Below the pieces are notes generated by a model that was not told where the DNA came from, ran no database searches, and saw only the letters and a program-made list of their open reading frames with translations. A stretch of 64,000 bases of DNA, from positions 124,001 to 188,000 of IMG/VR virus record IMGVR_UViG_3300030419_004471. One strand, written 5' to 3'. The translations under genes were made by a program, and so were the position numbers. Each line of letters starts with the position of its first letter. Positions within the stretch are counted from its first letter, which is position 1. This document shows, piece after piece, positions 22,449 through 51,547 of this stretch.

Positions 22449-22962
22449 TTCTATCTTGTTTTAATACGTCTTTAATTTCTGCTTTTGTATCTGTCTCTTC
22501 ATTAAATAATTTTACTAATGCATCATATTCAAAAACTACTTCACTAGCGTTTTGTATTTTATCTATAAAATATGTTCTATAGTTACCTAATCTATAGGAA
22601 TAGACAGCTCTATTATTTTTAATAAACCCATCAAATAATCTTTTACCTGGTGCATCAAATTTTTTCAATAAAGATGCCAAATCTTTATAATCTGGTGTTA
22701 TTGGGTTAGTTTTATCTCTTAGCTTTCTAAGCATTGATATTAAGGATGTTGGTAATACCTCATTAATTTTTATACAATGTAATTTCATCTTACCTCCATC
22801 AGAAACTCTACCAATTACAAAAACATATCTTGCATCAGGTCCTCTTTTAGTATCACCACCATAGTTAACAAGTCTGTAAATATTTCCTTGTTTTATCTGA
22901 GCTTTAGCTACTCTTCTTTCTGGTTTAAGAAACTCTAAATATTGATTTATATAATTTGGCAT
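22435..22962 (-). CDS. hypothetical phage protein (weak resemblance to T4 gp2 end protector)
   Basis: GNIYRLVNY...YRTY pattern; function tentative. Confidence 0.4.
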   Translation of the reverse strand: MPNYINQYLEFLKPERRVAKAQIKQGNIYRLVNYGGDTKRGPDARYVFVIGRVSDGGKMKLHCIKINEVLPTSLISMLRKLRDKTNPITPDYKDLASLLKKFDAPGKRLFDGFIKNNRAVYSYRLGNYRTYFIDKIQNASEVVFEYDALVKLFNEETDTKAEIKDVLKQDRSEND

Positions 22963-24224: not shown

Positions 24225-24225
24225 C

Positions 24226-26932: not shown

Positions 26933-27736
26933 TTACCAAAAAGTTTTCTCTCTATCTGAATCAGGTTCGTATGTAGTATGATGTACCACATCTGTATTAT
27001 AATCACTAGCTGATTTTGGATAAGGTTTTGTTTCGTGTTTTAATCTTTTTACCAAATCTCTCTTCTCTTTTTTACTCTGAGGTAGAATCTGAATGTATCT
27101 ATGTTTTGGTGGTTCTTCTCTTCTCCAGAACTCTTTATAACCTTGCTTACCGATTTCTTTTCTAAGGTGTTCTAAGTTACCACTACCCCATAAATTAAAT
27201 ACACTTCTACTATGAATCCAATCATATGGGTCTTTACTTAATGAGATACCCCAATTAGGCATAAGAGCGATATCTGTTGATAATCCTTGATAAATCCAAT
27301 TGGTAGCTTGATATATTCCTCCTAAGTGTTCTTGTCCATTATCAGCATAAGATAATAAAACTTTTATATTTTTATCATTATCTTTAATCCATTTAAATGT
27401 TTTTGCCAATGCATTAGATTCTATATTTGAACCATACCCATCATCAACATATAATCTAGTCAACTCTAAGATGTTATCTTTAGATAATCCCTCACAAACA
27501 GAAGTTGCTGCTTTTGCTCCTACTGGAAATCCATATATTGCACATCCTATTAGTTTATCTTTATTACCAAATACATCTTCTTCATCTAACTTATAGTAAA
27601 TACCCAAAGCATATCTACACATAGTCCAAGCATGCGTATAATGCTTCTTTACTATAATATCCTTCGCTATGGATTTAGATATTTGTGCAACGTGCACTCT
27701 ACTAACATCACAATATTCTTTACCTTCTACTTTCAA
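26933..27736 (-). CDS. Mom-like GNAT DNA-modification protein
   Basis: HY, ILELTRL, NIES, LLSYAD...H.GGIYQATNW.YQG, KHRY. Confidence 0.8.
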   Translation of the reverse strand: MKVEGKEYCDVSRVHVAQISKSIAKDIIVKKHYTHAWTMCRYALGIYYKLDEEDVFGNKDKLIGCAIYGFPVGAKAATSVCEGLSKDNILELTRLYVDDGYGSNIESNALAKTFKWIKDNDKNIKVLLSYADNGQEHLGGIYQATNWIYQGLSTDIALMPNWGISLSKDPYDWIHSRSVFNLWGSGNLEHLRKEIGKQGYKEFWRREEPPKHRYIQILPQSKKEKRDLVKRLKHETKPYPKSASDYNTDVVHHTTYEPDSDREKTFW

Positions 27737-28466
27737 TTGGTTCTAATTTATGTATTTCTAATTCATCCGTATCATTATTCTTAGGATAAGTTTCTGATGG
27801 ATGTTTTAATGTTTTTAATATTTTCTTTCGTTCACCACCTTTACTCAGTATGTAAACGTATCTATGTTTTCTTGGTTCTTTACGAATCCAAAATGGTTTA
27901 TCAACTTTTTCTTGTATTTTCTTTGGGTCATTAGTTCCATAATATGGGAAGATAGTTCTACCATGCTGCCATTCACCATCTTCATTAAATTTAAAACTCC
28001 AACTATCATTGTATCTAAGTGAGTTACCCTGATAAATCCAATTGGTAGCTTGATAAATTGTACCAGCGTGTCCTTCTTTTGGGTCTGAATATGATATTAA
28101 TCCTTTAATTTGTGGTGCGTTTTCTCTTAACCATTTAAAACTCTGTCCTATAAACCAACTTTCTATATTCGAACCATAATCATCAAATATAAAAACTCTA
28201 ACTAACTCTAATACTTCTGTTCTATCTAATAAAGGTGATATTGATTGTCCACTTAATCTTCCGATTGGGTCTCCATAACATATTACACCTATAAGTTTTT
28301 CTGATGAATTAAAAAATTGATGTGAATCATCTTCGATATATAATCCTAATGAATAGGATACTTTTGTCCAAAGATGTGAATAATGATTTTTAACTATAAT
28401 ATCTTTAGCTACAGATTTGGAAATCTTTCTAATAGATAATTTTGATGTATCACAATATTGCTTCAT
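27720..28466 (-). CDS. Mom-like GNAT DNA-modification protein (paralog)
   Basis: NHYS, LELVR, NIES, ISYSD..GH.GTIYQATNW.YQG, KHRY. Confidence 0.8.
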   Translation of the reverse strand: MKQYCDTSKLSIRKISKSVAKDIIVKNHYSHLWTKVSYSLGLYIEDDSHQFFNSSEKLIGVICYGDPIGRLSGQSISPLLDRTEVLELVRVFIFDDYGSNIESWFIGQSFKWLRENAPQIKGLISYSDPKEGHAGTIYQATNWIYQGNSLRYNDSWSFKFNEDGEWQHGRTIFPYYGTNDPKKIQEKVDKPFWIRKEPRKHRYVYILSKGGERKKILKTLKHPSETYPKNNDTDELEIHKLEPIESRR

Positions 28467-28666
28467 AAACTTCCAGTCCAAAACTCATTTAAATGTTGCC
28501 AAGTCTTGTTGGTTATGATTTTGTTTATGTTAGCTGGTGAGACTTTATTGTTACGAGCTATGATGGTTATATTTCTATGACCCATTCTCCATAACTTTCT
28601 TATTTGTATAACCTGTTCATCCGTCAGTTTTGCTGATGGATGTGATTGGCCTCTTCTTATTGGCAT
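28463..28666 (-). CDS. small HTH protein (homing-endonuclease C-terminal-like)
   Basis: GQSHPSAKLTDEQVIQIR...IA...VS...I..I...TW. Confidence 0.7.
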   Translation of the reverse strand: MPIRRGQSHPSAKLTDEQVIQIRKLWRMGHRNITIIARNNKVSPANINKIITNKTWQHLNEFWTGSL

Positions 28667-30735: not shown

Positions 30736-31155
30736 TTATAATAATTTTATTTGTGATGAATCACCATAATTTCCAAATAATTCATCGTCTTTTTTAATAT
30801 CTCTTAATGCTATTCCTGTATTGCTATCTATATTACCTTTTTCATACATAGTGTTTATCATAGCCAATGGTTCTGAAAATAAAAAATTAGTATCCTTTAT
30901 CAATCTAAAACTGATATATGAATAATCATCATTTATTCTACTCCCATATGAACGTAACAAATATGCTAAAACTTCTTTAGGTAACTCCTTAGCTTCTTTA
31001 AATCTTATTCTATACCATTTAGTTTTTCCTTCCCAATTTGGAAAAACCTGCTCTCCTTTCTTAATATCTACCAAAGCAAACAAACCAACACCGTGCACTT
31101 TGCTTGGTCTTTGATATGATTTTACACTCGTATTAAGATAATCAAATGGTTTCAT
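30736..31155 (-). CDS. SET-domain protein (lysine methyltransferase-like)
   Basis: SKVHGVGLFALVDIKKGE; ALRDIKKDDELFGNYG; NH motif appears as MINT. Confidence 0.78.
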   Translation of the reverse strand: MKPFDYLNTSVKSYQRPSKVHGVGLFALVDIKKGEQVFPNWEGKTKWYRIRFKEAKELPKEVLAYLLRSYGSRINDDYSYISFRLIKDTNFLFSEPLAMINTMYEKGNIDSNTGIALRDIKKDDELFGNYGDSSQIKLL

Positions 31156-31732
31156 ACTTTTTTCTTTTTTGAAAATCCCCATCGATAAAATAAGTCCAGT
31201 TACAATTGTGTCCATCTTCAATTATTTTAGGATAATTCTCCCTGTGTGGAGAATTAATCTTAAACCAGTGAGAATGTAAATCTTTTGTATCTCTTATAGA
31301 AAAATAACTAAAAATTGATAAAACACAATTTTCATTTGCAACCATCTTTGCATAATCCTCAAACTTATTATAGTTTGAATCATCATAAGTATCCATAAAG
31401 ATACCATCAAATTTGATATCCAGCTCTGGTATTACATCTATCCAATCTCCAAAATGTATATGAACATTCTCTTTACCCTCAGCCCACTCTAGAGCTTTTG
31501 AATAAATTTGTGGATTTGATTCGATACAATGATAGTTGCCAACTCTTTTATAAATGGCATCTGCACTATATCCAAGTCCAAATCCTACATCTAATACTTT
31601 ACCACCATTTTGTGTAACTATATTAGAATAAAATTCCATCAATTCTTTAGATACAATATCCATAACAATTGATGAATGGTCATCAGAATAATATATTCTG
31701 CTATCTGTTATTGTAACCTTTTTATTTTTCAA
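31142..31732 (-). CDS. class I SAM methyltransferase, GAMT/Rmt2-like
   Basis: VM, GGKVLDVGFGLG, IESNP, GDWIDV, FDGIFMDTY; TTG start. Confidence 0.8.
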   Translation of the reverse strand: MKNKKVTITDSRIYYSDDHSSIVMDIVSKELMEFYSNIVTQNGGKVLDVGFGLGYSADAIYKRVGNYHCIESNPQIYSKALEWAEGKENVHIHFGDWIDVIPELDIKFDGIFMDTYDDSNYNKFEDYAKMVANENCVLSIFSYFSIRDTKDLHSHWFKINSPHRENYPKIIEDGHNCNWTYFIDGDFQKRKKYETI

Positions 31733-33011: not shown

Positions 33012-34373
33012 CTAAAAGTTCATACTCTCCACATATTTCTTATGTAATAATTGCTTCCTTTCTATGTTTCCACTAGCGGATTCTTTAGTAGAAAGTATCC
33101 CTTCGGCTGAAGTTCCTTCGTAAACTTCTATGAATCCTGTATTAGTATCCATCTTACAAGGGAATGTTATTCCATCAGGTCCGAATCTGTTTTTCATAAT
33201 GTGAGCTCTTGCAGTATTATTCAATTTATCTTTTGATTTTCTACTCCAACTCATAATGAAATCAGCATTCATAACTTTTGCATAAGAGTCTGAAATTTTA
33301 TCTGCTTCTATAACTTCTGAATCAATTGCTGAACGATTAGTTTGAGATGCTGTCCATATTGGAATACCATATTCACCACTTAATCCTCTTAAGTCAATAT
33401 AAACACCACCTTGCTCAGCGTATGTTGAATCAGTTTTATTTGAATGTGATAGTAACAAATCTGCATAATCGATTAAGATTAAATCAGGTTTATTATCTGT
33501 TGCTATCATTTTATCTATGTGTTGTGCAATCTTCTTTGAAGATACACCTTTAGGTGGGAAATATTTAATTAATAATCTTCCCTGCAATCCTTTAATTTTT
33601 TCTTTTACTTTTTCTTTATTTTCTTTAATATCAGCTGATGGTATTTTAGAAAATACAGTATCATATCTTTGTCCTACATAATGTTCTGATAATTCTAATG
33701 AATAATGAACTACACTTAATCCTTGTTTTACTGCTGATGCTCCTAATGTAGTTAGTATCCAAGTTTTACCAACACCAGATGGTGCAACTACAACTCCCAA
33801 TTCACCTGGTCCTAATCCACCATCCATTAAATCATTCACTGGTTTCCAATCGGTTGGTACGGTATCTCTTTTTACATCATCTATACGAGAATCAAAATCA
33901 TCTTTATAGTCATGTCCTAAATCAGTCTCAATACCTACTTTCATAGCTTTATCAACCAAATCTTTTATCCTATTGTAATTACCAGCTTTTAATAAATCAA
34001 CTGATGTTAATATTACCTGTTTAAGATTTTGATTTCTACAAAACGAAGTAAACTCTTTTTTAATATAATCTAAATCTACATTACCAACTTGAGTATAAAC
34101 ATGTCTAAGTTGTTCTTTAACTGTAGTTTTTAAAATTTCATTATCTAATTTAGAAACTTTTACTTTGAAAACATCCATAGTAGGAGGTTTTCTAAACTCT
34201 TCATTATAATCTATGATTTCACCAATAATCCATTTATTAGCTTCTGATTCAAAAAACTTTGGTGATACTACTTCTGAAAGTTTATCTAAGAATTTACCAT
34301 CTGTAAGTAATGCTGAAACTACTTTAGATTGGAATGAATTTCCATATTTTGATAAATTATCTATCTCTTGCAT
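33012..34373 (-). CDS. 41: replicative helicase (T4 gp41/DnaB-like)
   Basis: APSGVGKT, SLE, IDYAD, SQTNR, KNRFG. Confidence 0.92.
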   Translation of the reverse strand: MQEIDNLSKYGNSFQSKVVSALLTDGKFLDKLSEVVSPKFFESEANKWIIGEIIDYNEEFRKPPTMDVFKVKVSKLDNEILKTTVKEQLRHVYTQVGNVDLDYIKKEFTSFCRNQNLKQVILTSVDLLKAGNYNRIKDLVDKAMKVGIETDLGHDYKDDFDSRIDDVKRDTVPTDWKPVNDLMDGGLGPGELGVVVAPSGVGKTWILTTLGASAVKQGLSVVHYSLELSEHYVGQRYDTVFSKIPSADIKENKEKVKEKIKGLQGRLLIKYFPPKGVSSKKIAQHIDKMIATDNKPDLILIDYADLLLSHSNKTDSTYAEQGGVYIDLRGLSGEYGIPIWTASQTNRSAIDSEVIEADKISDSYAKVMNADFIMSWSRKSKDKLNNTARAHIMKNRFGPDGITFPCKMDTNTGFIEVYEGTSAEGILSTKESASGNIERKQLLHKKYVESMNF

Positions 34374-34822
34374 TAAACTTTTAGTTTAAGTTTTGTTATT
34401 TGTTTCTTCTCTGTTCCGTATTTTTCGCAGATATATTTAATGTGTTCTCTGCCTTCTCTAGTAGAATAAAGTATTTCTAAATATTCATTTGCTTCTTTTT
34501 TTGAACATTCATAATCTACACAAACCAAATCTACTAACCAATCCTCATACTTTTGTGATTTTTTCCCCTTTACATATCTAAGATAATGCCTCCCCTTTGG
34601 TATGATACCAATGTATGCTAAATATAATGCTTTCGGAGGAAGAGCTTGTGTATATGGTTGTAGTTCCGCTATTAAATCAATCCAATCTGGATTCATTGAA
34701 AGAAACCTATGAATCATATAATTTGACCAACTCTTCAAATCTTCGTCCTCTAACTTATCGAAATATTTAGGGTCTTGATATTGTGTTATCGCTTTTATGT
34801 GGTCAAATAATCCTTTAGCCAT
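34373..34822 (-). CDS. 62: clamp-loader small subunit (gp62-like)
   Basis: YMIHRFLSM, SKKEANEYL; adjacent to gp44. Confidence 0.7.
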   Translation of the reverse strand: MAKGLFDHIKAITQYQDPKYFDKLEDEDLKSWSNYMIHRFLSMNPDWIDLIAELQPYTQALPPKALYLAYIGIIPKGRHYLRYVKGKKSQKYEDWLVDLVCVDYECSKKEANEYLEILYSTREGREHIKYICEKYGTEKKQITKLKLKV

Positions 34823-35105
34823 TCTTCTTAGTGTCTATTTTTTTATCCAAGTGTTTAATCTCTTCAGGTAATAATTGCTCATTTAAAGCCCCACATTCAC
34901 CACAAAGATAAACGTCAATTGGTATCATCACATCTTGCGCTGTACCAGTAATTAAACGAGATATTGTTCTAAGCTTTACACCTGGTAAAAATACATCATA
35001 ACCACATTCAGTACATACCATTGGTTTTGATGTTTTTAAATCTATTTTAGGTTGTTGTTGAGGTGTGTTTCCTGCTCCTCCTGCAGTTCCTATAATTTTT
35101 GCCAT
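34815..35105 (-). CDS. zinc-ribbon protein
   Basis: CTEC...CGEC. Confidence 0.65.
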   Translation of the reverse strand: MAKIIGTAGGAGNTPQQQPKIDLKTSKPMVCTECGYDVFLPGVKLRTISRLITGTAQDVMIPIDVYLCGECGALNEQLLPEEIKHLDKKIDTKKNG

Positions 35106-35106
35106 A

Positions 35107-36057
35107 TTATTTGTTTATCGTTGATAAAATGTTTAGTATCGTAGCCATAAAGGGTATTTCCTTATCGACTGCTAAAGCATCTCTATGTTGACCTTCTGCT
35201 AATACCAAAATTACTCCACTAACCTTACCTGAAGCATATTCATCTACCTTTTCATAGAGTACTGAATACATTTCTGTAAAATCTTGCATTTTAGAATCCG
35301 CAACCATCTGCCTTATTTTCATATATTTATTCCTACTATCATCTGATGATTTAAGAATATCTAATATTTTAGTTTTGAAATCAGAATCCATCAAATCATT
35401 TTTAGAAAGTTTTAACTCACCCTTAACAGAATTAAGTTGACAAGTATTTATTACTTTTCTTATATCAGGATATGATGAATCTATGATAGGAACTAAATCC
35501 TTTACATCATATTTTATTTCTTCGGAACTAAGTATCTTATCTAATTGTACTGCAACTTCTTTTTTAGAAGGTGGTACAATTTGGAATGTTTGACATCTAC
35601 TTTGAATTGGGTCAATTATCTTCTCAACATAATTACAGGTCAAAATAAACCTACAATGTTTTGAAAATGTTTCCATAAGATTTCTTAATATAGCTTGTGC
35701 ATTTGGAGTCATATAATCAAACTCATCCAATATAACAATCTTATATTTCTTAAATCCTTGTGATGATGCAAAGTTCTTAACTTTATTTCTAACTGTATCT
35801 ACATTGTTTTCATCAGATGCATTTATAATCATATAATCACATTCAATTGATTTAACAATGAGTTTAGCCAAAGTTGTTTTACCAGTACCAGCTTTACCAA
35901 AAAGTAAAAGGTGTGGAACATCTGATGTTTCCAAATATCCTGCAACCTTTTCCTTTAGATGTTCATTACCAACATAATCATCTAATTTTACGGGTCTATA
36001 TTTCTCTACCCATAATGAATTATCTATTGTTTCTTCTGTTTGTTCGAAAAATCCCAT
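35107..36057 (-). CDS. 44: clamp-loader AAA+ subunit (gp44/RFC)
   Basis: WVEKYRP, GKAGTGKT, NASD, LDEFD, SRC. Confidence 0.95.
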   Translation of the reverse strand: MGFFEQTEETIDNSLWVEKYRPVKLDDYVGNEHLKEKVAGYLETSDVPHLLLFGKAGTGKTTLAKLIVKSIECDYMIINASDENNVDTVRNKVKNFASSQGFKKYKIVILDEFDYMTPNAQAILRNLMETFSKHCRFILTCNYVEKIIDPIQSRCQTFQIVPPSKKEVAVQLDKILSSEEIKYDVKDLVPIIDSSYPDIRKVINTCQLNSVKGELKLSKNDLMDSDFKTKILDILKSSDDSRNKYMKIRQMVADSKMQDFTEMYSVLYEKVDEYASGKVSGVILVLAEGQHRDALAVDKEIPFMATILNILSTINK

Positions 36058-36058
36058 A

Positions 36059-37279
36059 TTATCTTCCTACTTCTTTTAAATAATTGTTTTTCATTGTTTC
36101 CCAATCCATACCAATAGCATCTATATAAAATAAATGTTCTGGTTTCAATCGATTAGAATCATATAACTTTGTATATCTTTTTATGGCTTGTCTTTTCCAC
36201 CACTTATTAATGTAATCAACTCCCTCTTCAAACTTCTTTTTCATCTTTAAATCTTTTTCTTCAATTTCTGAACGAAGAAATTCTGGTCCGTTTTCATACA
36301 TCATAGCAAGATACACTCCTCTTTTGAATCCGTGATGGTAATCAGCTGCTCTGATACCACATTCTTTAAAGATTCTTCCTAAAATCTTTTGTTTAATACC
36401 ACTAACAGGTCCTTGTCGTTGAGATTCAGCTCCATACATATTAGCTCCGTTTCTTTTTCTTTCTTCTGTAATATGTTCTTTATACCAATCCTCTCTGTTT
36501 TCTTTTAACCATTGGTGCCACGGGTCATAAAATTTATCATCAGGTTTAATTGCTATCTTACCAGCAGATTCCCCTAATGTTTTAAAATGTGGAATACCAT
36601 TATATTGAGAATGAATACCATATAAAGAAGTTGTACCAACACCAATTAGAGTTTGTCCATATTTCTTTTTCCAAAAATCTCTAATTTCAGGTACAGTAGT
36701 CATCATCGCTGTAAGTTTACCACCTAAGAAATTATATCCTAATGGTTGTGTACATACTATCGTAGAAGCGATTGTTGTATAATTTAACTTACCCTTTTTA
36801 AACTTATCTTCTTTATTCCATCCTATGTATTTATCTCTAACACCCATCGATGTAACATCAGATGCTAAAGATATCATACCCAGCAATTTACCACTTTTCT
36901 TATCCTTAACAAAAACTTTAACATTTCTACCAGGGTTAGCTGTCCAACTCATTGTATGAATCATCTTTCTAAGATGTGTCCATTTTGTAGCTTCTTTAGT
37001 ATCTTCTACAATTTCAACGTATGGTTCTAACTCTTCAATTTCTTTTATTGTAAGTTCTTTATCATTAATATCTGTAGGTCTCCATTGCCAATCATAATAA
37101 GATGCTATAGCAGATTTATCTCTAATCATAGAATCTCCTTGCAACTCTACCCACTTTTTATATAAAGTTTGTTCCTCTACAGACATCTGCATAAGATAGT
37201 CCATATTCTCAATGAGCTTTTTCTTCTCATCTTCGAATACAAATTGAGGTTTAGCTGGTTCGGTATCCCAAAAACTCAT
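36059..37279 (-). CDS. DUF4338/Druantia DruA-like protein
   Basis: PGR, RD.YIGW, QPLGYNFLGGKL, TTSLYG..SQYN, G.KRGVY. Confidence 0.72.
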   Translation of the reverse strand: MSFWDTEPAKPQFVFEDEKKKLIENMDYLMQMSVEEQTLYKKWVELQGDSMIRDKSAIASYYDWQWRPTDINDKELTIKEIEELEPYVEIVEDTKEATKWTHLRKMIHTMSWTANPGRNVKVFVKDKKSGKLLGMISLASDVTSMGVRDKYIGWNKEDKFKKGKLNYTTIASTIVCTQPLGYNFLGGKLTAMMTTVPEIRDFWKKKYGQTLIGVGTTSLYGIHSQYNGIPHFKTLGESAGKIAIKPDDKFYDPWHQWLKENREDWYKEHITEERKRNGANMYGAESQRQGPVSGIKQKILGRIFKECGIRAADYHHGFKRGVYLAMMYENGPEFLRSEIEEKDLKMKKKFEEGVDYINKWWKRQAIKRYTKLYDSNRLKPEHLFYIDAIGMDWETMKNNYLKEVGR

Positions 37280-37974
37280 TACTTAATCTCTACTAAATAA
37301 TAATTTGATGTATAATCTCCGTCCTCAAATGAAAGATGTGCTAATCCTTTAGATGAAATTTTTAATGAAGATGATTTTGAACCTTTGTTAGCTATAAGAA
37401 TAGCTTTTAGATATTTAGCTGAAAATGCTATAGGTTTTATATCATTATCACATTTACAATTAACATCAATACTAATTCTATTTGAATTAATTGATGAATA
37501 ACCTAAAATGATTTCACCTTTGTTTTTTGTACAAGTAAAAGTAAATGTATCTGCATCTGCTAATGCTCCTTTTGATTTGATAAATTTATTTACAAACTCA
37601 TCATCTAATGTTACCTCAGAATCAAATTCAGGTAATGCCTTTAAATCAGGTACAGCAGGTATAACAGATGGAGCAGCTAGCATATATTGTACTTTCGTAC
37701 CCTTATCACTAAATTTAAGAGCTCCTGTTACCTCTTCTACTTTTATTGATGAATCTAATACACTTAACAATCCTCTCAATTGAGAAGTTGTATAAATACC
37801 AAATTCACCACTAGGAAACTCACTATCTTTCACAGATACGTTTCCTAATAATGTCTTATCATCAGAAATCATTCTGACTGACATTGAATCATCAGTAGAG
37901 TTCATCATTACTGATTCAACCTCGCCACCGAGATTATATCGATTTATGAACCCATCTAATTTTAATTTTTCCAT
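37279..37974 (-). CDS. 45: DNA sliding clamp (gp45-like)
   Basis: EFGIY motif, PCNA-like two-domain pattern, replisome context. Confidence 0.75.
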   Translation of the reverse strand: MEKLKLDGFINRYNLGGEVESVMMNSTDDSMSVRMISDDKTLLGNVSVKDSEFPSGEFGIYTTSQLRGLLSVLDSSIKVEEVTGALKFSDKGTKVQYMLAAPSVIPAVPDLKALPEFDSEVTLDDEFVNKFIKSKGALADADTFTFTCTKNKGEIILGYSSINSNRISIDVNCKCDNDIKPIAFSAKYLKAILIANKGSKSSSLKISSKGLAHLSFEDGDYTSNYYLVEIK

Positions 37975-38037: not shown

Positions 38038-39084
38038 TTATTTCGTAATTATATTTCCAAAAGTATCCCTCAACCAATCATTAAAATTTTTACCAAATGC
38101 ATCAGTAACCTTATATTTTACTAATGTTTTCATAATATCTAATTTATTGATTGGATTTACTTCTTCATCATATCTATCTAAGATATTCATCTTAATGTTA
38201 CCACTAATATCTGGGTCATGCAATTGCATCAATTCTCTATTCATTAAGATTTGTTCTTTTGAATTTAATATCTCATCATAAATTTTAAGCTTTCCTTTCT
38301 TTTCATCAGCTAATTTTAATAAATCTTCAACTGATATTTTTTTATTTTCTGTAATTTCAGGAAATCTTTTAACTAATGTTTTAATACCACATCCGTGAAC
38401 ACCTGGTATATTATCTGAAGTATCACCATCTAATACTCTAAATAGTAATAAATTTTTAGATTCAATACCATATTCTTCCTTTACCAACTCTTTGTTGTAA
38501 AGTTTCTTTTTGGTAGGAGACCAAACGATGGTCGTATCATCTACTAATTGTAGGAAATCCTTATCAGTAGACATAACCACCGCTTGTTCGTTCTCTTTAA
38601 GAAGTTGGGTACTAATGTACGCCATTACATCATCCGCTTCACAACCATCGTAAATCATTGTTGTAATAGGTAAATAATTTAAGATATCAGCTAACCAAAC
38701 GAATTGTCTCTTCATTGATTCTCTTTCATCTTCTTCATTCATCAAATCAGCATATTGTCTATTGACTCTTAACTTATTTTTTGAACGTTCTGATTTATAC
38801 CCACTAAATCTTTTCTTTCTTTTCTGAGAACCTCCCTTACCATCAAAAACTACAATGACTCTTGTCGGTTGAGTGTTTCTAATCGCATAACCTATTGATT
38901 TCAGAACACCAGTTACACCACCAACGTGGTCACCATCATCATTCATTGTAGGAATGGATGACCAGCATCTGATAAATGTATTTAAACCATCGATAATTAG
39001 AACTCGGTCATTTCGTTTCCTATCGATATTTTGGTCGTGTGCTCTTTCAACCGAATTAAGTATGTCTTTGTAGAGTTTCTTCAT
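38038..39084 (-). CDS. rnh: 5'-3' exonuclease / T4 RNase H-like
   Basis: IIDG, VFDG, YK..R, EADD, STDKDF, GDTSDNIPGV. Confidence 0.92.
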   Translation of the reverse strand: MKKLYKDILNSVERAHDQNIDRKRNDRVLIIDGLNTFIRCWSSIPTMNDDGDHVGGVTGVLKSIGYAIRNTQPTRVIVVFDGKGGSQKRKKRFSGYKSERSKNKLRVNRQYADLMNEEDERESMKRQFVWLADILNYLPITTMIYDGCEADDVMAYISTQLLKENEQAVVMSTDKDFLQLVDDTTIVWSPTKKKLYNKELVKEEYGIESKNLLLFRVLDGDTSDNIPGVHGCGIKTLVKRFPEITENKKISVEDLLKLADEKKGKLKIYDEILNSKEQILMNRELMQLHDPDISGNIKMNILDRYDEEVNPINKLDIMKTLVKYKVTDAFGKNFNDWLRDTFGNIITK

Positions 39085-39321: not shown

Positions 39322-40443
39322 TTAATCATTTTCACCAGGTAACTCAGTATCTACTTCCATAGCATCTATATCTAATGTATCTGATTTGTATTGAAGTATT
39401 GTTGATTCACATATCTTTTTGTAAATCTGGTCTCTAACTTCTTCTCTATCATCCATCAATTCGATAAAATCCTTAGATTGAAACTTTAGTTCTTCACCAG
39501 TTTCAGTATCTATGTAAGTGTACCAAGCGCCAGCTTGTTTTACTAATTTATTATCTTTCATTACTCGTAACCAAGAACCATAGTTATCAATACCTCTATC
39601 GAAGTAGATTTCAAAATCAGCCGCTCTTAAAGGTGGCCCCATTCGATTCTTTATTACTTGACATCTCACTTTCATACCAACAACCTTATCCAATCCATTC
39701 ACTTTCATTTTGATTTGCCCCATTCCCTTCAATCTCAGTCTAACTGAAGAGTGGAAAGCTAGTGCTTTACCACCTGAAGTAGTCCAAGGGTCACCAAACA
39801 TTGCGTTCATTTTTTGTCTAAGTTGATTAGTAAATACTAATGAAATTTTCTGTCTACCAATCATATTGGTAATCTTTCTCATCGCCTTAGAAATAATAAT
39901 AGCTTTATCTGTAGCATATCCATCTTTATTATAATCAGCTGCTAACTCATTCTTAGTTGAAGCTGCTGCTACTGAATCTACTACGATTGTAACTAATTTA
40001 TCTCTTGAGGTTTGTCTTACCTTTTCAATGATAGTTTCACAATAATCAAAGATTTGTTCAACAGAATCCGCTGATACATAAAGAAGTTTAGAAACATCAA
40101 CACCGATAGCTTCTAAAAATTCTCTACTTACTGCAGTTTCGGTATCAATTAATACAGCTACACCACCTTGCTTTTGTGTTTCAGCAAGACAATGAGCAGA
40201 TACTAATGATTTACCACTCTGTTCCAAACCTGTAATCTCTGTAATTCTACCAACAGGCAACCCACCATATGGGCGATTAGAAATTGCAACATCCAACATA
40301 GCACATCCAGTCGAAATCCAACCCTCAACATTTGTGGGTGCTTCATCCGAATCAAGGAAAAATGCTACCTTCTGGTCTTTCGCTGATTTATTCAGCTCGC
40401 CAGCTAGAATATCTGCTAGTTCTAATTCTTTTTTCTTTGCCAT
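39322..40443 (-). CDS. uvsX: RecA/UvsX recombinase
   Basis: GLEQSGKS, DTE, VDSVAA, TNQLR, GGKALAF. Confidence 0.93.
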   Translation of the reverse strand: MAKKKELELADILAGELNKSAKDQKVAFFLDSDEAPTNVEGWISTGCAMLDVAISNRPYGGLPVGRITEITGLEQSGKSLVSAHCLAETQKQGGVAVLIDTETAVSREFLEAIGVDVSKLLYVSADSVEQIFDYCETIIEKVRQTSRDKLVTIVVDSVAAASTKNELAADYNKDGYATDKAIIISKAMRKITNMIGRQKISLVFTNQLRQKMNAMFGDPWTTSGGKALAFHSSVRLRLKGMGQIKMKVNGLDKVVGMKVRCQVIKNRMGPPLRAADFEIYFDRGIDNYGSWLRVMKDNKLVKQAGAWYTYIDTETGEELKFQSKDFIELMDDREEVRDQIYKKICESTILQYKSDTLDIDAMEVDTELPGEND

Positions 40444-40456
40444 TTAGTTTTTAATA

Positions 40457-41284
40457 TTATTTGTTAAACAAATCATCAAATGCAGCCGCAACATCATCAG
40501 TTTTCTTAGATGTTTTTGGTTTATCATCAGTATCAAATGGTAAATCATCAACTTCTTTTTCTGATTTAACCTCTTTGTTTGATAATGTTTCCTCAGCTAC
40601 TGAAGGTTCACCATCTTCATTTTTATCTGAAGTTGGATTTAACCATCCTTCTAATACTGCTTTTAATTCATCATAAGATAATTCTGAATATAAATCAGTA
40701 ATTTCAGTTTGAGTTTCTAAAAATTTAGTAACATCTTCAGCTTTATCAGATAATGCACTTTGATTTGGTTTAACTCTAATAGTTGTAACAGGATATGAAG
40801 TTCCTGCTTCTTCGGCAGATTGGTATTCTATAGTAATATCTCTACCCGTTTTAGGGTCTGTTATATCACCATAATCTGGGTCTGCTATATATCCAAGAAT
40901 TTCTTGATATACAGTTTTACCGAATCCCCAAAATTTGATTCCTTCTCCTTCTTGTCCTCTCACTAAAATAGGAACGAAAGTTCTTAATTTCGGCTCCATC
41001 TGCTTAGCAGCTTTCCAATCTTCCTTATCACCCATTCTTTTCAATCTATCAGCAAACTCAACTATAGGGTCAGGTCTACCAAATGATTGTGGTGAGAGAT
41101 AAGTTTTATTATTAATGTTGTAGTGAAAATACAATTCGATGAAAGGATTATCTTTTTCGAATTTGTAGGGAACGATTCTGACTTGATGTTTACCAGGTGT
41201 TGGTTTCCATAGATTGTCAGACTTCTTTTGTGTGTTTTGTAGTTTGTTCAGTCTACCTCTGATTGCGTCAATATTAATTGCCAT
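40457..41284 (-). CDS. 32: single-stranded DNA-binding protein (gp32-like)
   Basis: DPI.E, FGKTVY, DITD...GRD, acidic C-terminal tail ending FDDLF. Confidence 0.85.
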   Translation of the reverse strand: MAINIDAIRGRLNKLQNTQKKSDNLWKPTPGKHQVRIVPYKFEKDNPFIELYFHYNINNKTYLSPQSFGRPDPIVEFADRLKRMGDKEDWKAAKQMEPKLRTFVPILVRGQEGEGIKFWGFGKTVYQEILGYIADPDYGDITDPKTGRDITIEYQSAEEAGTSYPVTTIRVKPNQSALSDKAEDVTKFLETQTEITDLYSELSYDELKAVLEGWLNPTSDKNEDGEPSVAEETLSNKEVKSEKEVDDLPFDTDDKPKTSKKTDDVAAAFDDLFNK

Positions 41285-41812: not shown

Positions 41813-44326
41813 TTAAAATGAAAAAAACTTTTCAGCTGTTTTTGTTGAGGATAAAACCTCACCCCATTTCATAGCCCCATAAAAATCCTCTAACTTCTTT
41901 AAAAGTTCTCTTTCAAAGATTTTATCATAATCAATATAGGTCTTTACTAAATCCATAATTTCCTTTGGGTCATCATATCCTTTGAATGCTACTCCATCTA
42001 ATCCCATTGGATTTTGTTTAAGATACACCCATTTAACCTTATCACCATTTTTCATAGGTTCATATTTCATCTCACATTTAAAATGAGATAATAGTTGATT
42101 AAATGCTATAGCTGCTTTTACGTGAGCTGGTGTGCCTGATACAAATTGGAACATTCTGATTTGTTTACCCTTTGGAAGATATTTTGTTAAATTCTTTACA
42201 GATGTATTTTTTGCAATATCTACAACATTCATCTGAGATAAATTATTTTTGAAATCATAAATCTTATCAGTAAGTTCAGTTTCCGTTTTACCTTTTAGAA
42301 TATCAATTAGAACTTCACTCATAAACTTTCTAAATGCCGCTGGATAAGATGACCTAACAACATCTAAGCCCTTTACATCTAATTTATTAACAGATACACC
42401 ATTATCAGATATAATCCATTGTGCGTATCGTTTTTTAGCTATCCAAATACCTGATTTAGAAACATATTCTTTTTTAATCTCAAATCTATGTTTATCAATA
42501 TTGAAAATTCTTTTTGCAAGTATATCATAAAAATCATTTAGATAATCTTGCATTTCTCCTGCTATTCCATTTACGAAACCAGCGATATCATCATCAGAAT
42601 TATCTCTCCAAGTTGGGTTTCTACTATCAAGTAAGGGAGTAGCACTAAAAAAAACGGAATCAGTGTCAATGTATATATTACTATCCAAATCGGGATTACC
42701 CAATTCTTTATTGTACCTGATGTTAGCCATGTCAGCAGTTGACTTAATAACTGTCTGTCCTGTCGTGGTAACAGCGGTAGCATTATCAACATCATAAAAC
42801 CTAAAGGCAGGAAGGCCAAGCACCCCATATAAAGAATTAAGTAGAATTTTTTGTACCAATTGACGTTTTTTATACCATTCATATTTTTCATTATCTCCGC
42901 TTTTTCCATATTGTTTCATTTTATTTTTGAACTCAACTCTTTGATTAAACCAAATATCTAAGATATCAGGTATACAACCAACAGTATCAGTTCTATATAA
43001 TACACCATTAGATGCAACTGAAAATTTTGAATTATCTAAATACTTTTTAAGATTTTCTTTTGTAATCGTATCTTCACCGATTGTATAAGTATCCTTACCA
43101 CCCTTTACAAACTCATTCGCATCCCAATCATTAATCTTACCAATCTTAGTTTCTGGTGAGATATTAATACTCATAATAATAGATGGATATAGAGAAGTTA
43201 AATCTAAATCATAAATCCATTCATATTTTCCAACGATAGGTGCTTTTACATATGCTCCGATAAACTTCTCCTCATTGTTATCTCTTAATGCTTGCATTCT
43301 CTCCTGTCTATCAGCTGGTTTATTTGGTGCTACGATACCTTTTCTTTTCAAATAACATAACAATGCTCCTTCTAAGTATTTTGATGAATAAACAAAATCT
43401 TCGTATGGAACGTGACCTGCATGACAAATACCTCTTGCCGTATCGATGAATTGTAACTTCTTATCCATATCAACTACCAACTCAACATCCACTAAGTTAT
43501 ACTCAATAAACTTCTCTATATCATCTCTAAATAATTGGTCTAAGTTTCCTTGATATTCTACCTTACCTCTACCTAACTCTTTTGATGCAATACTATCTAA
43601 ACGATAATTGTCTAATTCTGTATAAGTAAAGTTTTTGTAAAGTGCTAAATAATCTAAATAAGATACACCAGCCATAAAGAATCTCTTACGATAAGGTGAC
43701 CAGAAACATTCACCGATTGGTGATAATCTATTTGCGTTTCTTTTACCTATAACATTTTTTATTCTATTATAAAGATATGGTGTATCAAAGTAATCTATAT
43801 TCCATCCAGTAACAATAGTTGGATTAATATATTCATATAGTTCTAAATATTTTTCTAATAATTCTGCTTCACTTCTAAATGGTAGTACAATAGCTTTATC
43901 AGTTTTCTTATTTGATAAAACATTATCTTTATCTAAAACCAAAACATAATATTGATTGGTAGCTGAATCATGCAATGCTATAGAAGTAATTTCATTCTTA
44001 GCTTCTTGCATATCAGGTAAACCTGTTTCCATCTCTACCTCAATATCATATGTAAGAGTTATATGCCCTTCTGATGGTAAATCCGAATCAGTATATGTAT
44101 CTACTAAAACTCTAGTCGTTTCTGCAACATCTGATTCAAAAAGATTAGGATTATCTTTATTGAATTTATATATCTTAGTTAACCTATCTCCATACAAAGA
44201 TACACACTCACCATTTTCTGCTTTTTCATATGCATATCTTGTATAAGGGAAAGTTCTGTAACCTAATTTATCATCCCATAAGTGTATGAGATTCTTCTGT
44301 CTTTGGTAATATACGTTTTGGTACAT
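41813..44326 (-). CDS. 43: family B DNA polymerase (gp43-like)
   Basis: DIE exonuclease motif, GWN..FD, DLTSLYPS, KILLNSLYG, YIDTDS, KKRY. Confidence 0.97.
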   Translation of the reverse strand: MYQNVYYQRQKNLIHLWDDKLGYRTFPYTRYAYEKAENGECVSLYGDRLTKIYKFNKDNPNLFESDVAETTRVLVDTYTDSDLPSEGHITLTYDIEVEMETGLPDMQEAKNEITSIALHDSATNQYYVLVLDKDNVLSNKKTDKAIVLPFRSEAELLEKYLELYEYINPTIVTGWNIDYFDTPYLYNRIKNVIGKRNANRLSPIGECFWSPYRKRFFMAGVSYLDYLALYKNFTYTELDNYRLDSIASKELGRGKVEYQGNLDQLFRDDIEKFIEYNLVDVELVVDMDKKLQFIDTARGICHAGHVPYEDFVYSSKYLEGALLCYLKRKGIVAPNKPADRQERMQALRDNNEEKFIGAYVKAPIVGKYEWIYDLDLTSLYPSIIMSINISPETKIGKINDWDANEFVKGGKDTYTIGEDTITKENLKKYLDNSKFSVASNGVLYRTDTVGCIPDILDIWFNQRVEFKNKMKQYGKSGDNEKYEWYKKRQLVQKILLNSLYGVLGLPAFRFYDVDNATAVTTTGQTVIKSTADMANIRYNKELGNPDLDSNIYIDTDSVFFSATPLLDSRNPTWRDNSDDDIAGFVNGIAGEMQDYLNDFYDILAKRIFNIDKHRFEIKKEYVSKSGIWIAKKRYAQWIISDNGVSVNKLDVKGLDVVRSSYPAAFRKFMSEVLIDILKGKTETELTDKIYDFKNNLSQMNVVDIAKNTSVKNLTKYLPKGKQIRMFQFVSGTPAHVKAAIAFNQLLSHFKCEMKYEPMKNGDKVKWVYLKQNPMGLDGVAFKGYDDPKEIMDLVKTYIDYDKIFERELLKKLEDFYGAMKWGEVLSSTKTAEKFFSF
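42571..42909 (-). CDS. candidate overprinted (+1 frame) membrane protein within polB
   Basis: 112 stop-free codons, two to three TM segments, coinciding with atypical synonymous codons in polB. Confidence 0.45.
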   Translation of the reverse strand: MEKAEIMKNMNGIKNVNWYKKFYLILYMGCLAFLPLGFMMLIMLPLLPRQDRQLLSQLLTWLTSGTIKNWVIPIWIVIYTLTLIPFFLVLLPYLIVETQLGEIILMMISLVS

Positions 44327-51544: not shown

Positions 51545-51547
51545 ACC

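What the first reader, a model, noticed from the sequence alone, without database searches (positions are those of the whole stretch)
36059..37279. Druantia DruA/DUF4338-like gene wedged between sliding clamp and clamp loader
Seen: DUF4338-like motifs, translationally coupled to gp45 and directly upstream of gp44, in an early unit. Known: DruA belongs to a bacterial anti-phage system. Inference: here it is a replisome-coupled DNA modifier (possibly Mom/GNAT-related) or a defence mimic. This would also hint at DruA's unknown biochemical role.
Basis: partly seen in the sequence, partly recalled or inferred. Interest (0 to 1): 0.6.

Follow-up and report, generated by a model that had tools for sequence, protein, structure and literature searches.

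The report
Phage DruA-family GNAT beside replisome genes
A marine T4-like phage carries, between its sliding-clamp and clamp-loader genes, a strongly conserved enzyme of the same family as the bacterial defence protein DruA; its predicted fold is most like the DNA-modifying enzyme Mom, and in related phages it sits beside true Mom genes, so it is probably a DNA-modification enzyme, though its chemistry is untested.

Summary
Window 36059-37279 (- strand) is a 406-aa ORF that matches Pfam DruA/DUF4338 (73 bits, cut-off 27) and PADLOC DruA1. Its ATG overlaps the stop of the sliding-clamp gene (TAATG), and its stop lies 1 nt before the gp44 clamp-loader start.

The AlphaFold2 model (pLDDT 89.8) has a GNAT fold. 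Its best match among 48,161 PDB chains is phage Mu Mom (Z 9.7). A bacterial DruA model gives the same top match (Z 10.2). No sequence profile links the family to Mom.

In about 110 related loci the gene recurs in at least five different positions inside the replisome cluster. It evolves as slowly as the replisome genes (dN/dS 0.065). Some relatives fuse it to a ParB_N domain.

This phage also has two true Mom genes, about 7.6 kb away. In relatives, Mom genes lie directly next to the DruA-like gene.

The rest of Druantia is absent, and nothing supports a defence mimic. My best reading (about 0.45) is a nucleic-acid, probably DNA, acyl- or aminoacyl-transferase that belongs to a Mom-type modification toolkit expressed with the replisome. 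Donor, target and clamp contact are unknown.

DruA-like and "Mom-like" proteins in cyanophages are already published, so this is a new member of a known kind.

The parts
36059..37279 (-). DruA/DUF4338-family gene, 406 aa (P0001)
   Evidence: ORF. Pfam PF14236 73.3 bits. PADLOC DruA1. AF2 model pLDDT 89.8, pTM 0.85.
37229..37279 (-). N-terminal residues 1-17: disordered in the model but carrying conserved aromatic/acidic short motifs (M-x-F-W-D ... F-[DV]-[FY]-[DE]). Possibly a docking peptide; untested.
   Evidence: pLDDT 41 for residues 1-10. Alignment of N-termini. The complex test with gp45 gave no verdict.
37031..37237 (-). N-terminal helical region, residues 15-83, acidic (residues 1-84 have pI 4.4)
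   Evidence: DSSP on the model. Charge count.
36569..37030 (-). GNAT core, residues 84-237: strands 86-91, 119-126, 132-140, 168-176, 213-218, 233-237
   Evidence: Model. More than 50 GNAT structures at Z 7.3-9.7, spanning model residues about 79-350.
36713..36751 (-). Loop after strand 4, residues 177-189 (TQPLGYNFLGGKL). It is glycine-rich and invariant, and sits where GNATs carry motif A (Q/R-x-x-G-x-G/A).
   Evidence: Q178, P179, G181, G186, G187, K188 and L189 are invariant in 47 phage sequences. P, GGKL are also invariant in the alignment with a bacterial DruA.
36602..36643 (-). Strand 5 and the following loop, residues 213-226 (GVGTTSLYGIHSQY), with invariant T216, T217, L219, Y220, G221, S224 and Y226
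36320..36568 (-). Basic helical insertion, residues 238-320 (pI 9.5), between the last two core strands. This is the same topological place as Mom's essential HTH-like insertion.
   Evidence: DSSP. Alignment ranges, model 79-336 to Mom 20-230. Mom's insertion at residues 175-209 is described in PMC13219725. Charge count. The placement is inferred from strand order, not from a residue-level superposition.
36062..36319 (-). Last core strand (321-326) plus C-terminal helices. The extreme C-terminus, V-G-R, has G405 and R406 invariant.
37279..37974 (-). gp45-type sliding clamp; its stop overlaps the start of the DruA-like gene
   Evidence: phrog_223, 4.1e-13. Junction sequence.
35107..36057 (-). 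gp44-type clamp-loader ATPase; starts 1 nt after the stop of the DruA-like gene
   Evidence: phrog_168, 1.2e-79. Junction sequence.
34373..35105 (-). orf96 (34815-35105; no family, but conserved in this position in relatives) and gp62-type clamp-loader subunit (34373-34822)
   Evidence: phrog_225, 5.7e-16. Synteny.
41813..44326 (-). gp43-type family B DNA polymerase. In several relatives the DruA-like gene lies directly next to it.
   Evidence: phrog_262, 7e-188. Synteny.
27720..28481 (-). True Mom-family gene A (253 aa)
   Evidence: Pfam PF25680 Mom, 156.9 bits against a cut-off of 27.1. Keeps Mom residues H58, Y59, R111, S124, D149 and Y159.
26933..27736 (-). True Mom-family gene B (267 aa), 42% identical to gene A
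   Evidence: Pfam PF25680, 155.8 bits. Residue mapping and identity.

Best explanation
The gene encodes an active GNAT-fold transferase of the DruA/DUF4338 family. It is an accessory gene, not a core one, transcribed and probably translationally coupled with the clamp and clamp-loader genes of a roughly 214-kb marine T4-like phage.

The most likely function is transfer of an acyl or aminoacyl group onto nucleic acid, most probably the phage's own replicating or newly replicated DNA. It would act as one member of a Mom-type DNA-hypermodification toolkit that these phages keep inside or next to the replication module. The glycine-rich loop after strand 4 (TQPLGYNFLGGKL) and the T-T-S-L-Y-G...S-x-Y segment would form the donor and catalytic site. 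The basic helical insertion between the last two strands would hold the nucleic acid, as proposed for Mom's insertion at the same place.

Shown here: family membership, the fold, the gene order and its recurrence, purifying selection, co-location with Mom genes, and the ParB_N fusion.

Inferred: that the protein is catalytically active, that the substrate is DNA, that it acts at the fork, and that its role differs from that of the two true Mom enzymes. The donor (acyl-CoA or aminoacyl-tRNA), the target base and any clamp contact are unknown.
For: (1) Family. Pfam DruA 73 bits, PADLOC DruA1 E 1.4e-19.

(2) Fold. In the AF2 model (pLDDT 89.8), the best of 48,161 PDB representatives is Mu Mom 8bv8_B (Z 9.7, rmsd 3.7, 170 residues aligned). 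The next hit has Z 8.4, and all further hits are GNATs aligning about 135-165 residues. Foldseek gives Mom probability 0.99. A bacterial DruA model also ranks Mom first (Z 10.2, 169 aligned).

(3) Insertion. A basic helical insertion (residues 238-320, pI 9.5) lies between the last two strands, where Mom has its essential HTH-like insertion.

(4) Neighbourhood. Of 58 loci with at least 3 kb on both sides, 41 have gp43, gp44, gp45 or gp62 within 5 kb, and 23 have one within 500 nt. There are at least five arrangements: gp45-X-gp44, X-gp43, gp44-X-gp62, gp43-X, and X followed by gp62 a few kb on. These arrangements occur on both sides of the deepest split of the family tree.

(5) Mom linkage. 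The phage has two true Mom genes 7.6 kb away. All 4 long relative contigs searched have 1-3 Mom genes. Mom ORFs lie within the fetched flanks in 17 loci. They are directly adjacent in L040, L044, L050 and L056, and between gp43 and gp45 in L047 and L034.

(6) DNA-related fusion. L090 encodes a 603-aa ParB_N + DruA protein, and an ESM Atlas cluster of 235 mostly viral members has the same architecture. Mom-family genes in phages Antuna and phiEf11 directly follow ParB-like genes.

(7) Constraint. dN/dS is 0.065, similar to gp44 (0.055-0.066), gp43 (0.07-0.11) and gp45 (0.10). In deeper pairs its dN is lower than that of every replisome gene.

(8) Shared invariant columns. The columns S, R, I, P, GGKL, TT, G, Y, W and R are the same in phage proteins and a bacterial DruA.

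(9) Literature. DUF4338 is called a GNAT domain in PMC10853773. Mom transfers glycine from Gly-tRNA to N6 of adenine in dsDNA, per PMC13219725.
Against: There is no sequence-level link to Mom. The Pfam Mom model is not hit, and hhalign probabilities are 1.3%, 0.2% and 1.5%.

The two models also share most of their alignment rows, so they are not independent.

Mom's catalytic residues (R111, S124, D149, R151) could not be mapped, and the local sequence patterns differ (S-F-A-D-E-R in Mom, T-T-S-L-Y-G here).

The phage already has two Mom enzymes, so the same reaction would be redundant.

Seventeen of the 58 evaluable loci have no replisome gene within 5 kb. These include both pelagiphages, which also lack Mom.

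Gene order in T4-like phages is partly inherited, so the loci are not independent events.

No biochemical, expression or modification data were obtainable.
Confidence: 0.45

Rival explanations
1. It is a protein N-acetyltransferase. It would acylate a phage replisome protein or a host protein, for takeover or regulation, using acetyl-CoA, as most GNATs do.
For: The many GNAT hits at Z 7.3-8.4 are mostly protein or small-molecule acetyltransferases. The loop after strand 4 (Q-P-L-G-Y-N, G-G-K) resembles the CoA-binding motif A, which Mom lacks. The gene sits among replisome genes.
Against: Mom is the best structural match for both models. Relatives are fused to ParB_N. Mom genes are directly adjacent in several relatives. 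A large basic insertion lies at Mom's proposed DNA-binding site.
Confidence: 0.2
2. It is an RNA- or tRNA-directed GNAT. It would modify tRNA or aminoacyl-tRNA (as TacT/AtaT toxins or TmcA do), either to reshape translation or as an accessory step that prepares the aminoacyl-tRNA donor for the neighbouring Mom enzymes.
For: Mom uses Gly-tRNA (PMC13219725), so a tRNA-handling partner next to Mom genes is conceivable. GNATs acting on tRNA (TacT, FemX, TmcA) are described in that paper. A bacterial GNAT toxin (7byy) and FemA (1lrz) are among the structural hits at Z 7.5-7.6.
Against: These hits rank no better than any other GNAT. The pelagiphages have the gene without any Mom. The ParB_N fusion points to DNA. 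The window has no tRNA gene.
Confidence: 0.12
3. It is a defence mimic or decoy. The phage copy of DruA would poison or titrate the host's Druantia type I complex without any catalysis.
For: It is homologous to DruA over most of its length.
Against: The active-site-like invariant residues are shared with a bacterial DruA, and dN/dS is 0.065. The family is common outside Druantia: next to recombinases, next to TniQ, in several copies per genome, and in 25 of 401 sampled genomes. The genome has no DruE hallmark. The gene occurs in phages of very different hosts, such as Pelagibacter and Synechococcus. The host of this phage, and that host's defence systems, are unknown.
Confidence: 0.04
4. It is a selfish mobile cassette. 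The gene would persist because it moves between phage genomes into gaps between conserved replication genes, as free-standing homing endonuclease genes do, with no role in replication or modification.
For: It is absent from the nearest isolate, Mel-JY01, at the same gp45-gp44 junction. Its position within the cluster changes often, with 24 changes on the tree. It is more similar between some phages than their flanking core genes are, for example 81% against 57-67% in L014. Bacterial relatives lie in mobile elements.
Against: The fold is a transferase, not a nuclease. Purifying selection is strong across 22-90% identity. It recurs next to Mom genes and in ParB_N fusions.
Confidence: 0.07

Closest known systems
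DruA (DUF4338, Pfam PF14236), first gene of the Druantia type I anti-phage system
   Same: Homologous over the core, the insertion and part of the C-terminal region: Pfam 73 bits, PADLOC DruA1 E 1.4e-19, and the phage-family HMM hits a bacterial DruA at 7e-25. Same invariant columns. Same GNAT fold, with Mom as top PDB match.
   Different: It is encoded by a lytic-type T4-like phage inside the replisome cluster. No DruB-E genes are present. It has its own N-terminal region with aromatic/acidic motifs. The function of DruA itself is unknown: no paper in the searched library holds both 'Druantia' and 'GNAT'.
Phage Mu Mom (Pfam PF25680; PDB 8BV8), a Gly-tRNA-dependent adenine N6 modifier of dsDNA
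   Same: GNAT fold. Mom is the best structural match, with the longest alignment (170 residues). Both have an extra helical insertion between the last two strands. Both families associate with ParB-type domains. The two kinds of gene are neighbours in related phages.
   Different: No detectable sequence relationship. The protein is twice as long, with added N- and C-terminal helical parts and an insertion about twice as long. It keeps a motif-A-like glycine-rich loop that Mom lacks. Mom's catalytic residues were not mapped. In this phage it co-exists with two true Moms.
DruA-like / 'Mom-like' proteins already noted in T4-like cyanophages (S-PRM1 and five others in the Phold preprint 10.1101/2025.08.05.668817; ORF152 'methylcarbamoylase mom' of S-SCSM2R in PMC12801897) and the 'DUF4338 domain-containing protein' of Pelagibacter phage Mosig
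   Same: Same family: 24-32% identity by tblastn. The S-SSM7 and Mosig homologues hit Pfam DruA. In S-SSM7 the gene also lies in the clamp-loader cluster, between gp44 and gp62.
   Different: Those reports give a structural resemblance only. In the passages read, none mentions the replisome linkage, the co-location with true Mom genes or the ParB_N fusions. The S-SCSM2R paper treats the protein as the phage's Mom, which this window argues against, because true Moms co-exist with it.
Canonical GNAT N-acetyltransferases (for example RimI, SpeG, AAC(6'), Naa50)
   Same: Core fold, Z 7.3-8.4 to dozens of structures. Glycine-rich loop after strand 4.
   Different: About 250 extra residues (N-terminal helices, an 83-residue insertion, C-terminal helices). 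The motif reads Q-x-x-G-x-N rather than Q/R-x-x-G-x-G/A. No helix is modelled where helix 4 normally lies (residues 219-232 are coil).
Phage orphan DNA methyltransferases and ParB_N-methyltransferase fusions (a functional analogy, from general knowledge)
   Same: An accessory, phage-encoded, single-gene DNA modifier that would protect progeny DNA. The ParB_N fusion architecture is shared with relatives of this gene.
   Different: The chemistry would be acyl or aminoacyl transfer, not methyl transfer. No Dam, N6_N4 or C5 methyltransferase Pfam hit was found in this phage genome.

Membership tests
Pfam PF14236 DruA / DUF4338 protein family | Score above the curated gathering threshold of the family HMM | tested here: met
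   73.3 bits against a cut-off of 27, covering profile positions 46-296 of 297. PADLOC DruA1 PDLC00002: 68.5 bits.
Pfam PF14236 DruA / DUF4338 protein family | Conserved residues shared with a bacterial family member | tested here: met
   In the alignment with the G322 bacterial DruA (268 bits to PADLOC DruA1), the invariant columns correspond to P0001 G134, S140, R148, I174, P179, G186-G187-K188-L189, T216, T217, G221, Y226 and R368.
Druantia type I defence system (DruA-B-C-D-E) | DruE, a large YprA-like helicase with the DUF1998/MZB domain, in the same locus or genome | tested here: not met
   PF09369 has no match in the 213.6-kb genome, while the control genomes do match.
Druantia type I defence system (DruA-B-C-D-E) | druB, druC and druD adjacent to druA | tested here: not met
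   The neighbours are the sliding clamp, clamp loader, orf96 and gp62.
Druantia type I defence system (DruA-B-C-D-E) | Confers anti-phage defence | not testable with these tools
   This needs plaque assays. The gene is in a virus genome rated 100% complete by CheckV.
Mom family (Pfam PF25680) | Match to the Mom HMM or profile | tested here: not met
   No Mom hit at E <= 1. hhalign probabilities 1.3%, 0.2% and 1.5%. As a positive control, the window's two true Mom genes score 156-157 bits.
Mom family (Pfam PF25680) | GNAT fold with an extra helical insertion between the last two strands | tested here: met
   Mom is the top PDB match (Z 9.7, 170 aligned). The insertion at residues 238-320 lies between strands 233-237 and 321-326; Mom's is at 175-209. 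The placement is inferred from strand order and alignment ranges, not from a residue-level superposition.
Mom family (Pfam PF25680) | Catalytic residues R111, S124, D149 and R151 (with H58, Y59, Y159) | tested here: inconclusive
   No reliable residue-level alignment could be obtained; the hhalign alignment has low confidence. The local motifs differ.
Mom family (Pfam PF25680) | Gly-tRNA-dependent modification of adenine N6 in dsDNA | not testable with these tools
   This needs biochemistry, as in PMC13219725.
GNAT superfamily | Mixed alpha/beta GNAT core fold | tested here: met
   226 chains at Z >= 5. All 50 rows shown are GNAT-fold acyl- or acetyltransferases or relatives of them such as FemA. 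DUF4338 is called GNAT in PMC10853773.
GNAT superfamily | Motif A, Q/R-x-x-G-x-G/A, after strand 4 (acyl-CoA pyrophosphate binding) | tested here: inconclusive
   Q178-P-L-G181-Y-N183 followed by G186-G187-K188 is invariant, but the last motif position is N rather than G/A. No ligand test was possible.
Sliding-clamp client proteins (gp45-binding) | A terminal aromatic peptide that docks on the clamp | tested here: inconclusive
   The disordered N-terminus has conserved F-W-D and F-D-F type motifs, and the phage's gp43 ends in FFSF. The complex prediction scored 0.22 against a mark of 0.34, which is no verdict.

The most novel reading that the evidence does not exclude
DruA-family proteins would be a second, sequence-unrelated lineage of Mom-like enzymes that write an acyl or aminoacyl mark on DNA. 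In T4-like marine phages the enzyme would travel with true Mom genes and the replisome, and would add a so far undescribed hypermodification to nascent DNA. In Druantia type I the same chemistry would be the missing 'self-marking' or sensing activity of the system. Phage copies would then be the counterpart of orphan methyltransferases.
Probability: 0.2. Interest if true: 0.85.

Novelty: new member of a known kind. Interest (0 to 1): 0.55.

Why it matters
DruA is the signature gene of Druantia type I, and its biochemistry is unknown. Recent mechanistic work found in the library concerns the DruH-DruE type III systems.

Four lines of evidence here turn 'function unknown' into a concrete, cheap experiment. 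The family has a GNAT fold closest to Mom. Phage and bacterial members share one invariant residue set. Some members are fused to ParB_N. In an abundant group of marine phages the gene stays with the replisome genes and with true Mom genes. The experiment is to express the protein and look for a new nucleoside, first with acyl-CoA and then with aminoacyl-tRNA as donor.

The result also corrects a published annotation habit of calling the cyanophage homologues 'mom'. The phage in this window has both kinds of gene. More broadly, these phages appear to keep a multi-enzyme DNA-modification set inside the replication module.

Tried and rejected
- Megablast of the 6-kb region against GenBank phages found no match.
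- A profile search of PDB sequences with the family alignment found nothing.
- Foldseek against the PDB gave no hit at E <= 1e-3, although Mom and GNATs had high probability.
- Sequence links to Mom failed. I tried hhalign with Mu Mom alone, with a 10-sequence Mom profile and with a 12-sequence Mom profile, and blastp against the window's own Mom paralogues. All were non-significant. The last hhalign alignment had a plausible register in its first half only, so I did not use it to map catalytic residues.
- The clamp-docking test (complex prediction with gp45 x3 and P0001 residues 1-60) scored 0.22 against a mark of 0.34. That is no verdict, and I count it neither for nor against binding. The first attempt met a busy machine.
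- The promoter and terminator scan was uninformative, with fewer promoter-like sites than in shuffles.
- The NCBIfam scan gave only a chance-level hit.
- I looked for a canonical Druantia type I locus as a reference. The strongest bacterial DruA in 401 sampled genomes lies after TniQ and before a HerA-like ATPase, with no DruE. It served as a bacterial family member, not as a proven Druantia component.
- The larger bacterial fusion proteins (693 and 1281 aa) showed no further Pfam domain.
- The careful tree search did not finish, so the tree I cite is the quick one.
Full report
**What is there.** The window is bases 124001-188000 of a 213,601-bp IMG/VR virus record that CheckV rates 100% complete. 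It has about 30% G+C, and every long ORF is on the minus strand.

The reported interval 36059-37279 is exactly one ORF of 406 aa, P0001. It matches:
- Pfam PF14236 'DruA' at E 2.4e-20 and 73.3 bits (cut-off 27), across profile positions 46-296 of 297;
- the PADLOC DruA1 model at E 1.4e-19;
- phrog_19197, of unknown function.

The gene lies in a tight co-directional replication block. In order on the minus strand:
- gp43 polymerase (41813-44326), orf114, and gp32 (40457-41284);
- UvsX (39322-40443), orf83, and an exonuclease (38038-39084);
- gp45 clamp (37279-37974), the DruA-like gene, and gp44 (35107-36057);
- orf96, gp62 (34373-34822), and gp41 helicase (33012-34373);
- nrdB and nrdA.

The clamp's TAA shares its last base with the ATG of the DruA-like gene (TAATG). 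That gene's TAA is followed by a single base and then the gp44 ATG. 'Early unit' could not be checked, because the promoter scan was below chance.

**Who else has it.** The word-index search found 2,942 relatives. The best 120 are 77-90% identical and come from marine metagenomes, on contigs of up to 250 kb.

In GenBank phages, tblastn finds the family in 31 records. These include Pelagibacter myophages Mosig and HTVC008M (30-32% identity over the full length) and about 25 T4-like Synechococcus phages (24-29% identity).

The nearest isolate by polymerase, Microcystis phage Mel-JY01 (53% identity), has the order gp43, clamp-like gene, gp44, a small ORF, gp62, with nothing inserted. The gene is therefore accessory, not part of the core replisome.

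The literature already holds three separate pieces:
- DUF4338 is called a GNAT domain (PMC10853773).
- Six Synechococcus phages are noted as having DruA-like folds (preprint 10.1101/2025.08.05.668817).
- The S-SCSM2R homologue is annotated 'methylcarbamoylase mom' from structural similarity (PMC12801897).

No paper in the library contains both 'Druantia' and 'GNAT'.

**Fold.** I built a 47-sequence alignment of loci-derived homologues at 34-91% identity. AlphaFold2 then gave a confident model, with pLDDT 89.8 and pTM 0.85. Its parts are:
- a disordered N-terminus (residues 1-14);
- N-terminal helices (15-83);
- a GNAT-like core (strands 86-91, 119-126, 132-140, 168-176, 213-218, 233-237);
- an 83-residue helical insertion (238-320);
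- a last strand (321-326) and C-terminal helices.

An exhaustive structural comparison with 48,161 PDB representatives put phage Mu Mom (8bv8_B) first, at Z 9.7, rmsd 3.7 Å and 170 aligned residues. Dozens of GNAT acetyltransferases followed at Z 8.4-7.3, with roughly 135-165 aligned residues. Foldseek listed Mom at probability 0.99, but no hit passed E 1e-3. The GNAT fold is therefore secure.

The specific closeness to Mom is only suggestive. The margin is 1.3 Z units, and no sequence profile links the two families.

Mom has an essential HTH-like insertion at residues 175-209, proposed to lie in the DNA major groove (PMC13219725). Judged by strand order and alignment ranges, P0001's larger basic insertion (pI 9.5) is in the same topological place.

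**Relation to bacterial DruA.** Sampling 401 genomes of one phylum found PF14236 in 25 of them, often on tiny contigs or in several copies per genome.

The strongest hit scores 268 bits to PADLOC DruA1. It lies after a TniQ gene and before a HerA-like ATPase, with no DruE nearby. Other cellular relatives of the phage clade lie next to serine recombinases. The family is thus much wider than Druantia.

Aligned with the phage proteins, the bacterial protein keeps the same invariant columns: S140, R148, I174, P179, G186-G187-K188-L189, T216, T217, G221, Y226 and R368 in P0001 numbering. Its model (pLDDT 72.5) again ranks Mom first, at Z 10.2 with 169 aligned residues, against 9.7 for the next hit.

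The phage genome has no DUF1998/MZB domain, the hallmark of DruE. The protein is a member of the DruA family but not part of a Druantia system.

**Gene neighbourhood.** I fetched 80 viral loci and 30 loci from MAGs, most of which look like misbinned phage. I then located replisome genes in them by tblastn. Of 58 loci with at least 3 kb on both sides, 41 have gp43, gp44, gp45 or gp62 within 5 kb, and 23 have one within 500 nt.

The position is not fixed:
- gp45-X-gp44 in this phage's clade and in L074 (41% identity);
- X directly before gp43 in L038, L039, L042, L049, L050, L080, L081, L097 and L098;
- gp44-X-gp62 in cyanophage S-SSM7 and in L083, L111 and L115, with L096 similar (gp44-X, gp62 2.6 kb further on);
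- gp43-X in L101, L104, L105 and L107;
- X followed by gp62 1.5-4 kb downstream in L061-L079.

A quick maximum-likelihood tree shows replisome-linked arrangements on both sides of the deepest split, with 24 changes of arrangement. Seventeen evaluable loci, including both pelagiphages, have no replisome gene within 5 kb. Inherited synteny inflates these counts. Even so, repeated relocation within the cluster is harder to explain by inheritance alone.

**Selection.** Against the closest relatives, where dS is about 0.75, dN/dS is 0.065. The corresponding values are 0.055-0.066 for gp44, 0.07-0.11 for gp43 and 0.10 for gp45.

In deeper pairs its dN is below that of every replisome gene. For L014 it is 0.148 against 0.26-0.36. 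This could also reflect exchange of the gene between phage lineages.

**The decisive context: true Mom genes.** A search of the phage's own genome with Pfam Mom (PF25680) found two tandem genes, at window 27720-28481 and 26933-27736. They score 157 and 156 bits, lie just after nrdA, and are followed by a PD-(D/E)XK nuclease gene. They are 42% identical to each other and keep Mom residues H58, Y59, R111, S124, D149 and Y159.

All four long contigs of relatives that could be searched also carry one to three Mom genes. Within the fetched flanks, Mom-family ORFs occur in 17 loci:
- directly upstream of the DruA-like gene in L040 (63 nt), L044 (32 nt) and L050 (41 nt);
- overlapping its end in L056;
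- between gp43 and gp45 in L047 and L034;
- a few kb upstream, just before gp43, in L027 and L030.

Two things follow. First, the DruA-like gene is not the phage's Mom. Second, in this phage group Mom-type DNA modifiers are themselves housed in the replication module, and the DruA-like gene keeps company with them.

Co-occurrence is not obligatory. The two pelagiphages have the DruA-like gene without Mom. S-SSM7 has its Mom far away. Mel-JY01 has neither.

**Domain fusions.** An ESM Atlas cluster of 235 mostly viral members combines DruA with ParB_N (TM 0.85 to the model). Locus L090 encodes such a 603-aa protein, with ParB_N at 23.6 bits (just under its cut-off) and DruA at 76 bits.

Mom-family genes of Microbacterium phage Antuna and Enterococcus phage phiEf11 directly follow ParB-like genes. 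Both families therefore associate with the same DNA-related domain.

Giant-virus proteins of 469-1260 aa also contain the fold.

**Interpretation.** My best-supported reading (about 0.45) is an active GNAT-fold transferase that acts on nucleic acid, most probably phage DNA. It would be part of a Mom-type hypermodification set expressed with the replisome. The donor could be an acyl-CoA or an aminoacyl-tRNA. An acyl-CoA is hinted at by the motif-A-like Q-P-L-G-Y-N/G-G-K loop, which Mom lacks. The target base and any division of labour with the two Moms are open.

The rivals, in order:
- a protein acetyltransferase (0.2);
- a tRNA-directed or donor-preparing GNAT (0.12);
- a selfish mobile cassette (0.07);
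- a Druantia decoy (0.04).

The N-terminal aromatic/acidic motifs (F-W-D ... F-D-F), set beside gp43's FFSF tail, make a clamp-docking peptide conceivable. The single complex prediction gave no verdict, so I make no claim of binding.

**Verdict.** The GNAT fold and Mom resemblance hold, as does the gene-order coupling to the replisome. Physical coupling, early timing and DNA modification are untested, and the mimic idea is unsupported.

Homologues in cyanophages and pelagiphages are already annotated or discussed, so the gene is a new member of a known kind. What this analysis adds is a testable link between DruA-family proteins, Mom-type DNA modification and the replication module.

Noticed in passing
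window 26933-28481 (- strand): Two tandem true Mom-family genes (Pfam PF25680, 156-157 bits), 42% identical to each other, both keeping Mom's H58, Y59, R111, S124, D149 and Y159. Two paralogues suggest two specificities (donor or sequence context).
   Followed up: partly
window 26023-26880 (- strand): A PD-(D/E)XK nuclease gene (PF12705, 65 bits) lies directly downstream of the two Mom genes.
   Followed up: no
window 30736-31732 (- strand): A SET-domain protein (PF00856, E 8.9e-6) and a small methyltransferase-like protein (weak Methyltransf_25/PCMT hits) lie between nrdA and nrdB.
   Followed up: no
window 20936-25617 and 44326-45456 (- strand): A run of glycosyltransferase genes (Glyco_trans_1_2, Glycos_transf_2, two phrog_2170), plus a weak GT4/GT1-like ORF just upstream of gp43. 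They could act on DNA or on surface sugars.
   Followed up: no
window 50471-52825 (- strand): An HNH endonuclease gene (phrog_119) lies next to a 425-aa ORF whose C-terminal part matches a DNA-polymerase phrog (phrog_17, residues 310-402).
   Followed up: no
window 46501-48525, 49220-50458, 56321-58639, 59766-61460, 61460-63562 (- strand): Five large ORFs (412-772 aa) have no PHROG match at E <= 1e-5.
   Followed up: no
window 34815-35105 (- strand) and the same position in L006-L060: A small ORF (orf96) with no family match is conserved between gp44 and gp62 in nearly all relatives. Mel-JY01 and S-SSM7 also have a small ORF after gp44.
   Followed up: partly
L014, L015, L030 compared with the window: The DruA-like gene is much more similar between these phages (71-81%) than the flanking gp43, gp44 and gp45 genes are (50-67%). 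This means either stronger constraint or exchange of the gene between lineages.
   Followed up: partly
L090:1800-3608; ESM Atlas cluster of 644-aa proteins: ParB_N + DruA fusion proteins, mostly viral (235 members in the cluster).
   Followed up: partly
L164 (Microbacterium phage Antuna); L167 (Enterococcus phage phiEf11); hits H77 and H78: Mom-family genes directly follow ParB-like nuclease genes. In Antuna a tRNA-Gly(ccc) gene lies next to the Mom gene. In Microbacterium phages WaterT and BarnCat the Mom-like gene abuts DNA polymerase I.
   Followed up: no
G002 (5 copies); small contigs L177-L186; L189 (G322): Bacterial DUF4338 genes are often multi-copy or sit on very short contigs, as repeated mobile elements do. 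The best DruA1 match lies between a TniQ gene and a HerA-like ATPase, not in a Druantia operon.
   Followed up: partly
BFVD hits A0A3G4ZXG3, A0A5K0UAJ3, A0A3G4ZRA1: Giant-virus proteins (Faunusvirus, Yasminevirus, Dasosvirus; 469-1260 aa) contain the same fold, at Foldseek E 5e-20 to 1.5e-9.
   Followed up: no
window 36062-36070 (residues 404-406) and all 47 aligned homologues: The extreme C-terminus ends in V/I-G-R, with G and R invariant, including in pelagiphage homologues. Conservation of the very last residues is unexplained.
   Followed up: no
G000:C1:69848-70636 (outside the window): A thymidylate-synthase-family gene (PF00303, 323 bits). No Dam, N6_N4 or C5 DNA methyltransferase Pfam match anywhere in the phage genome.
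   Followed up: no
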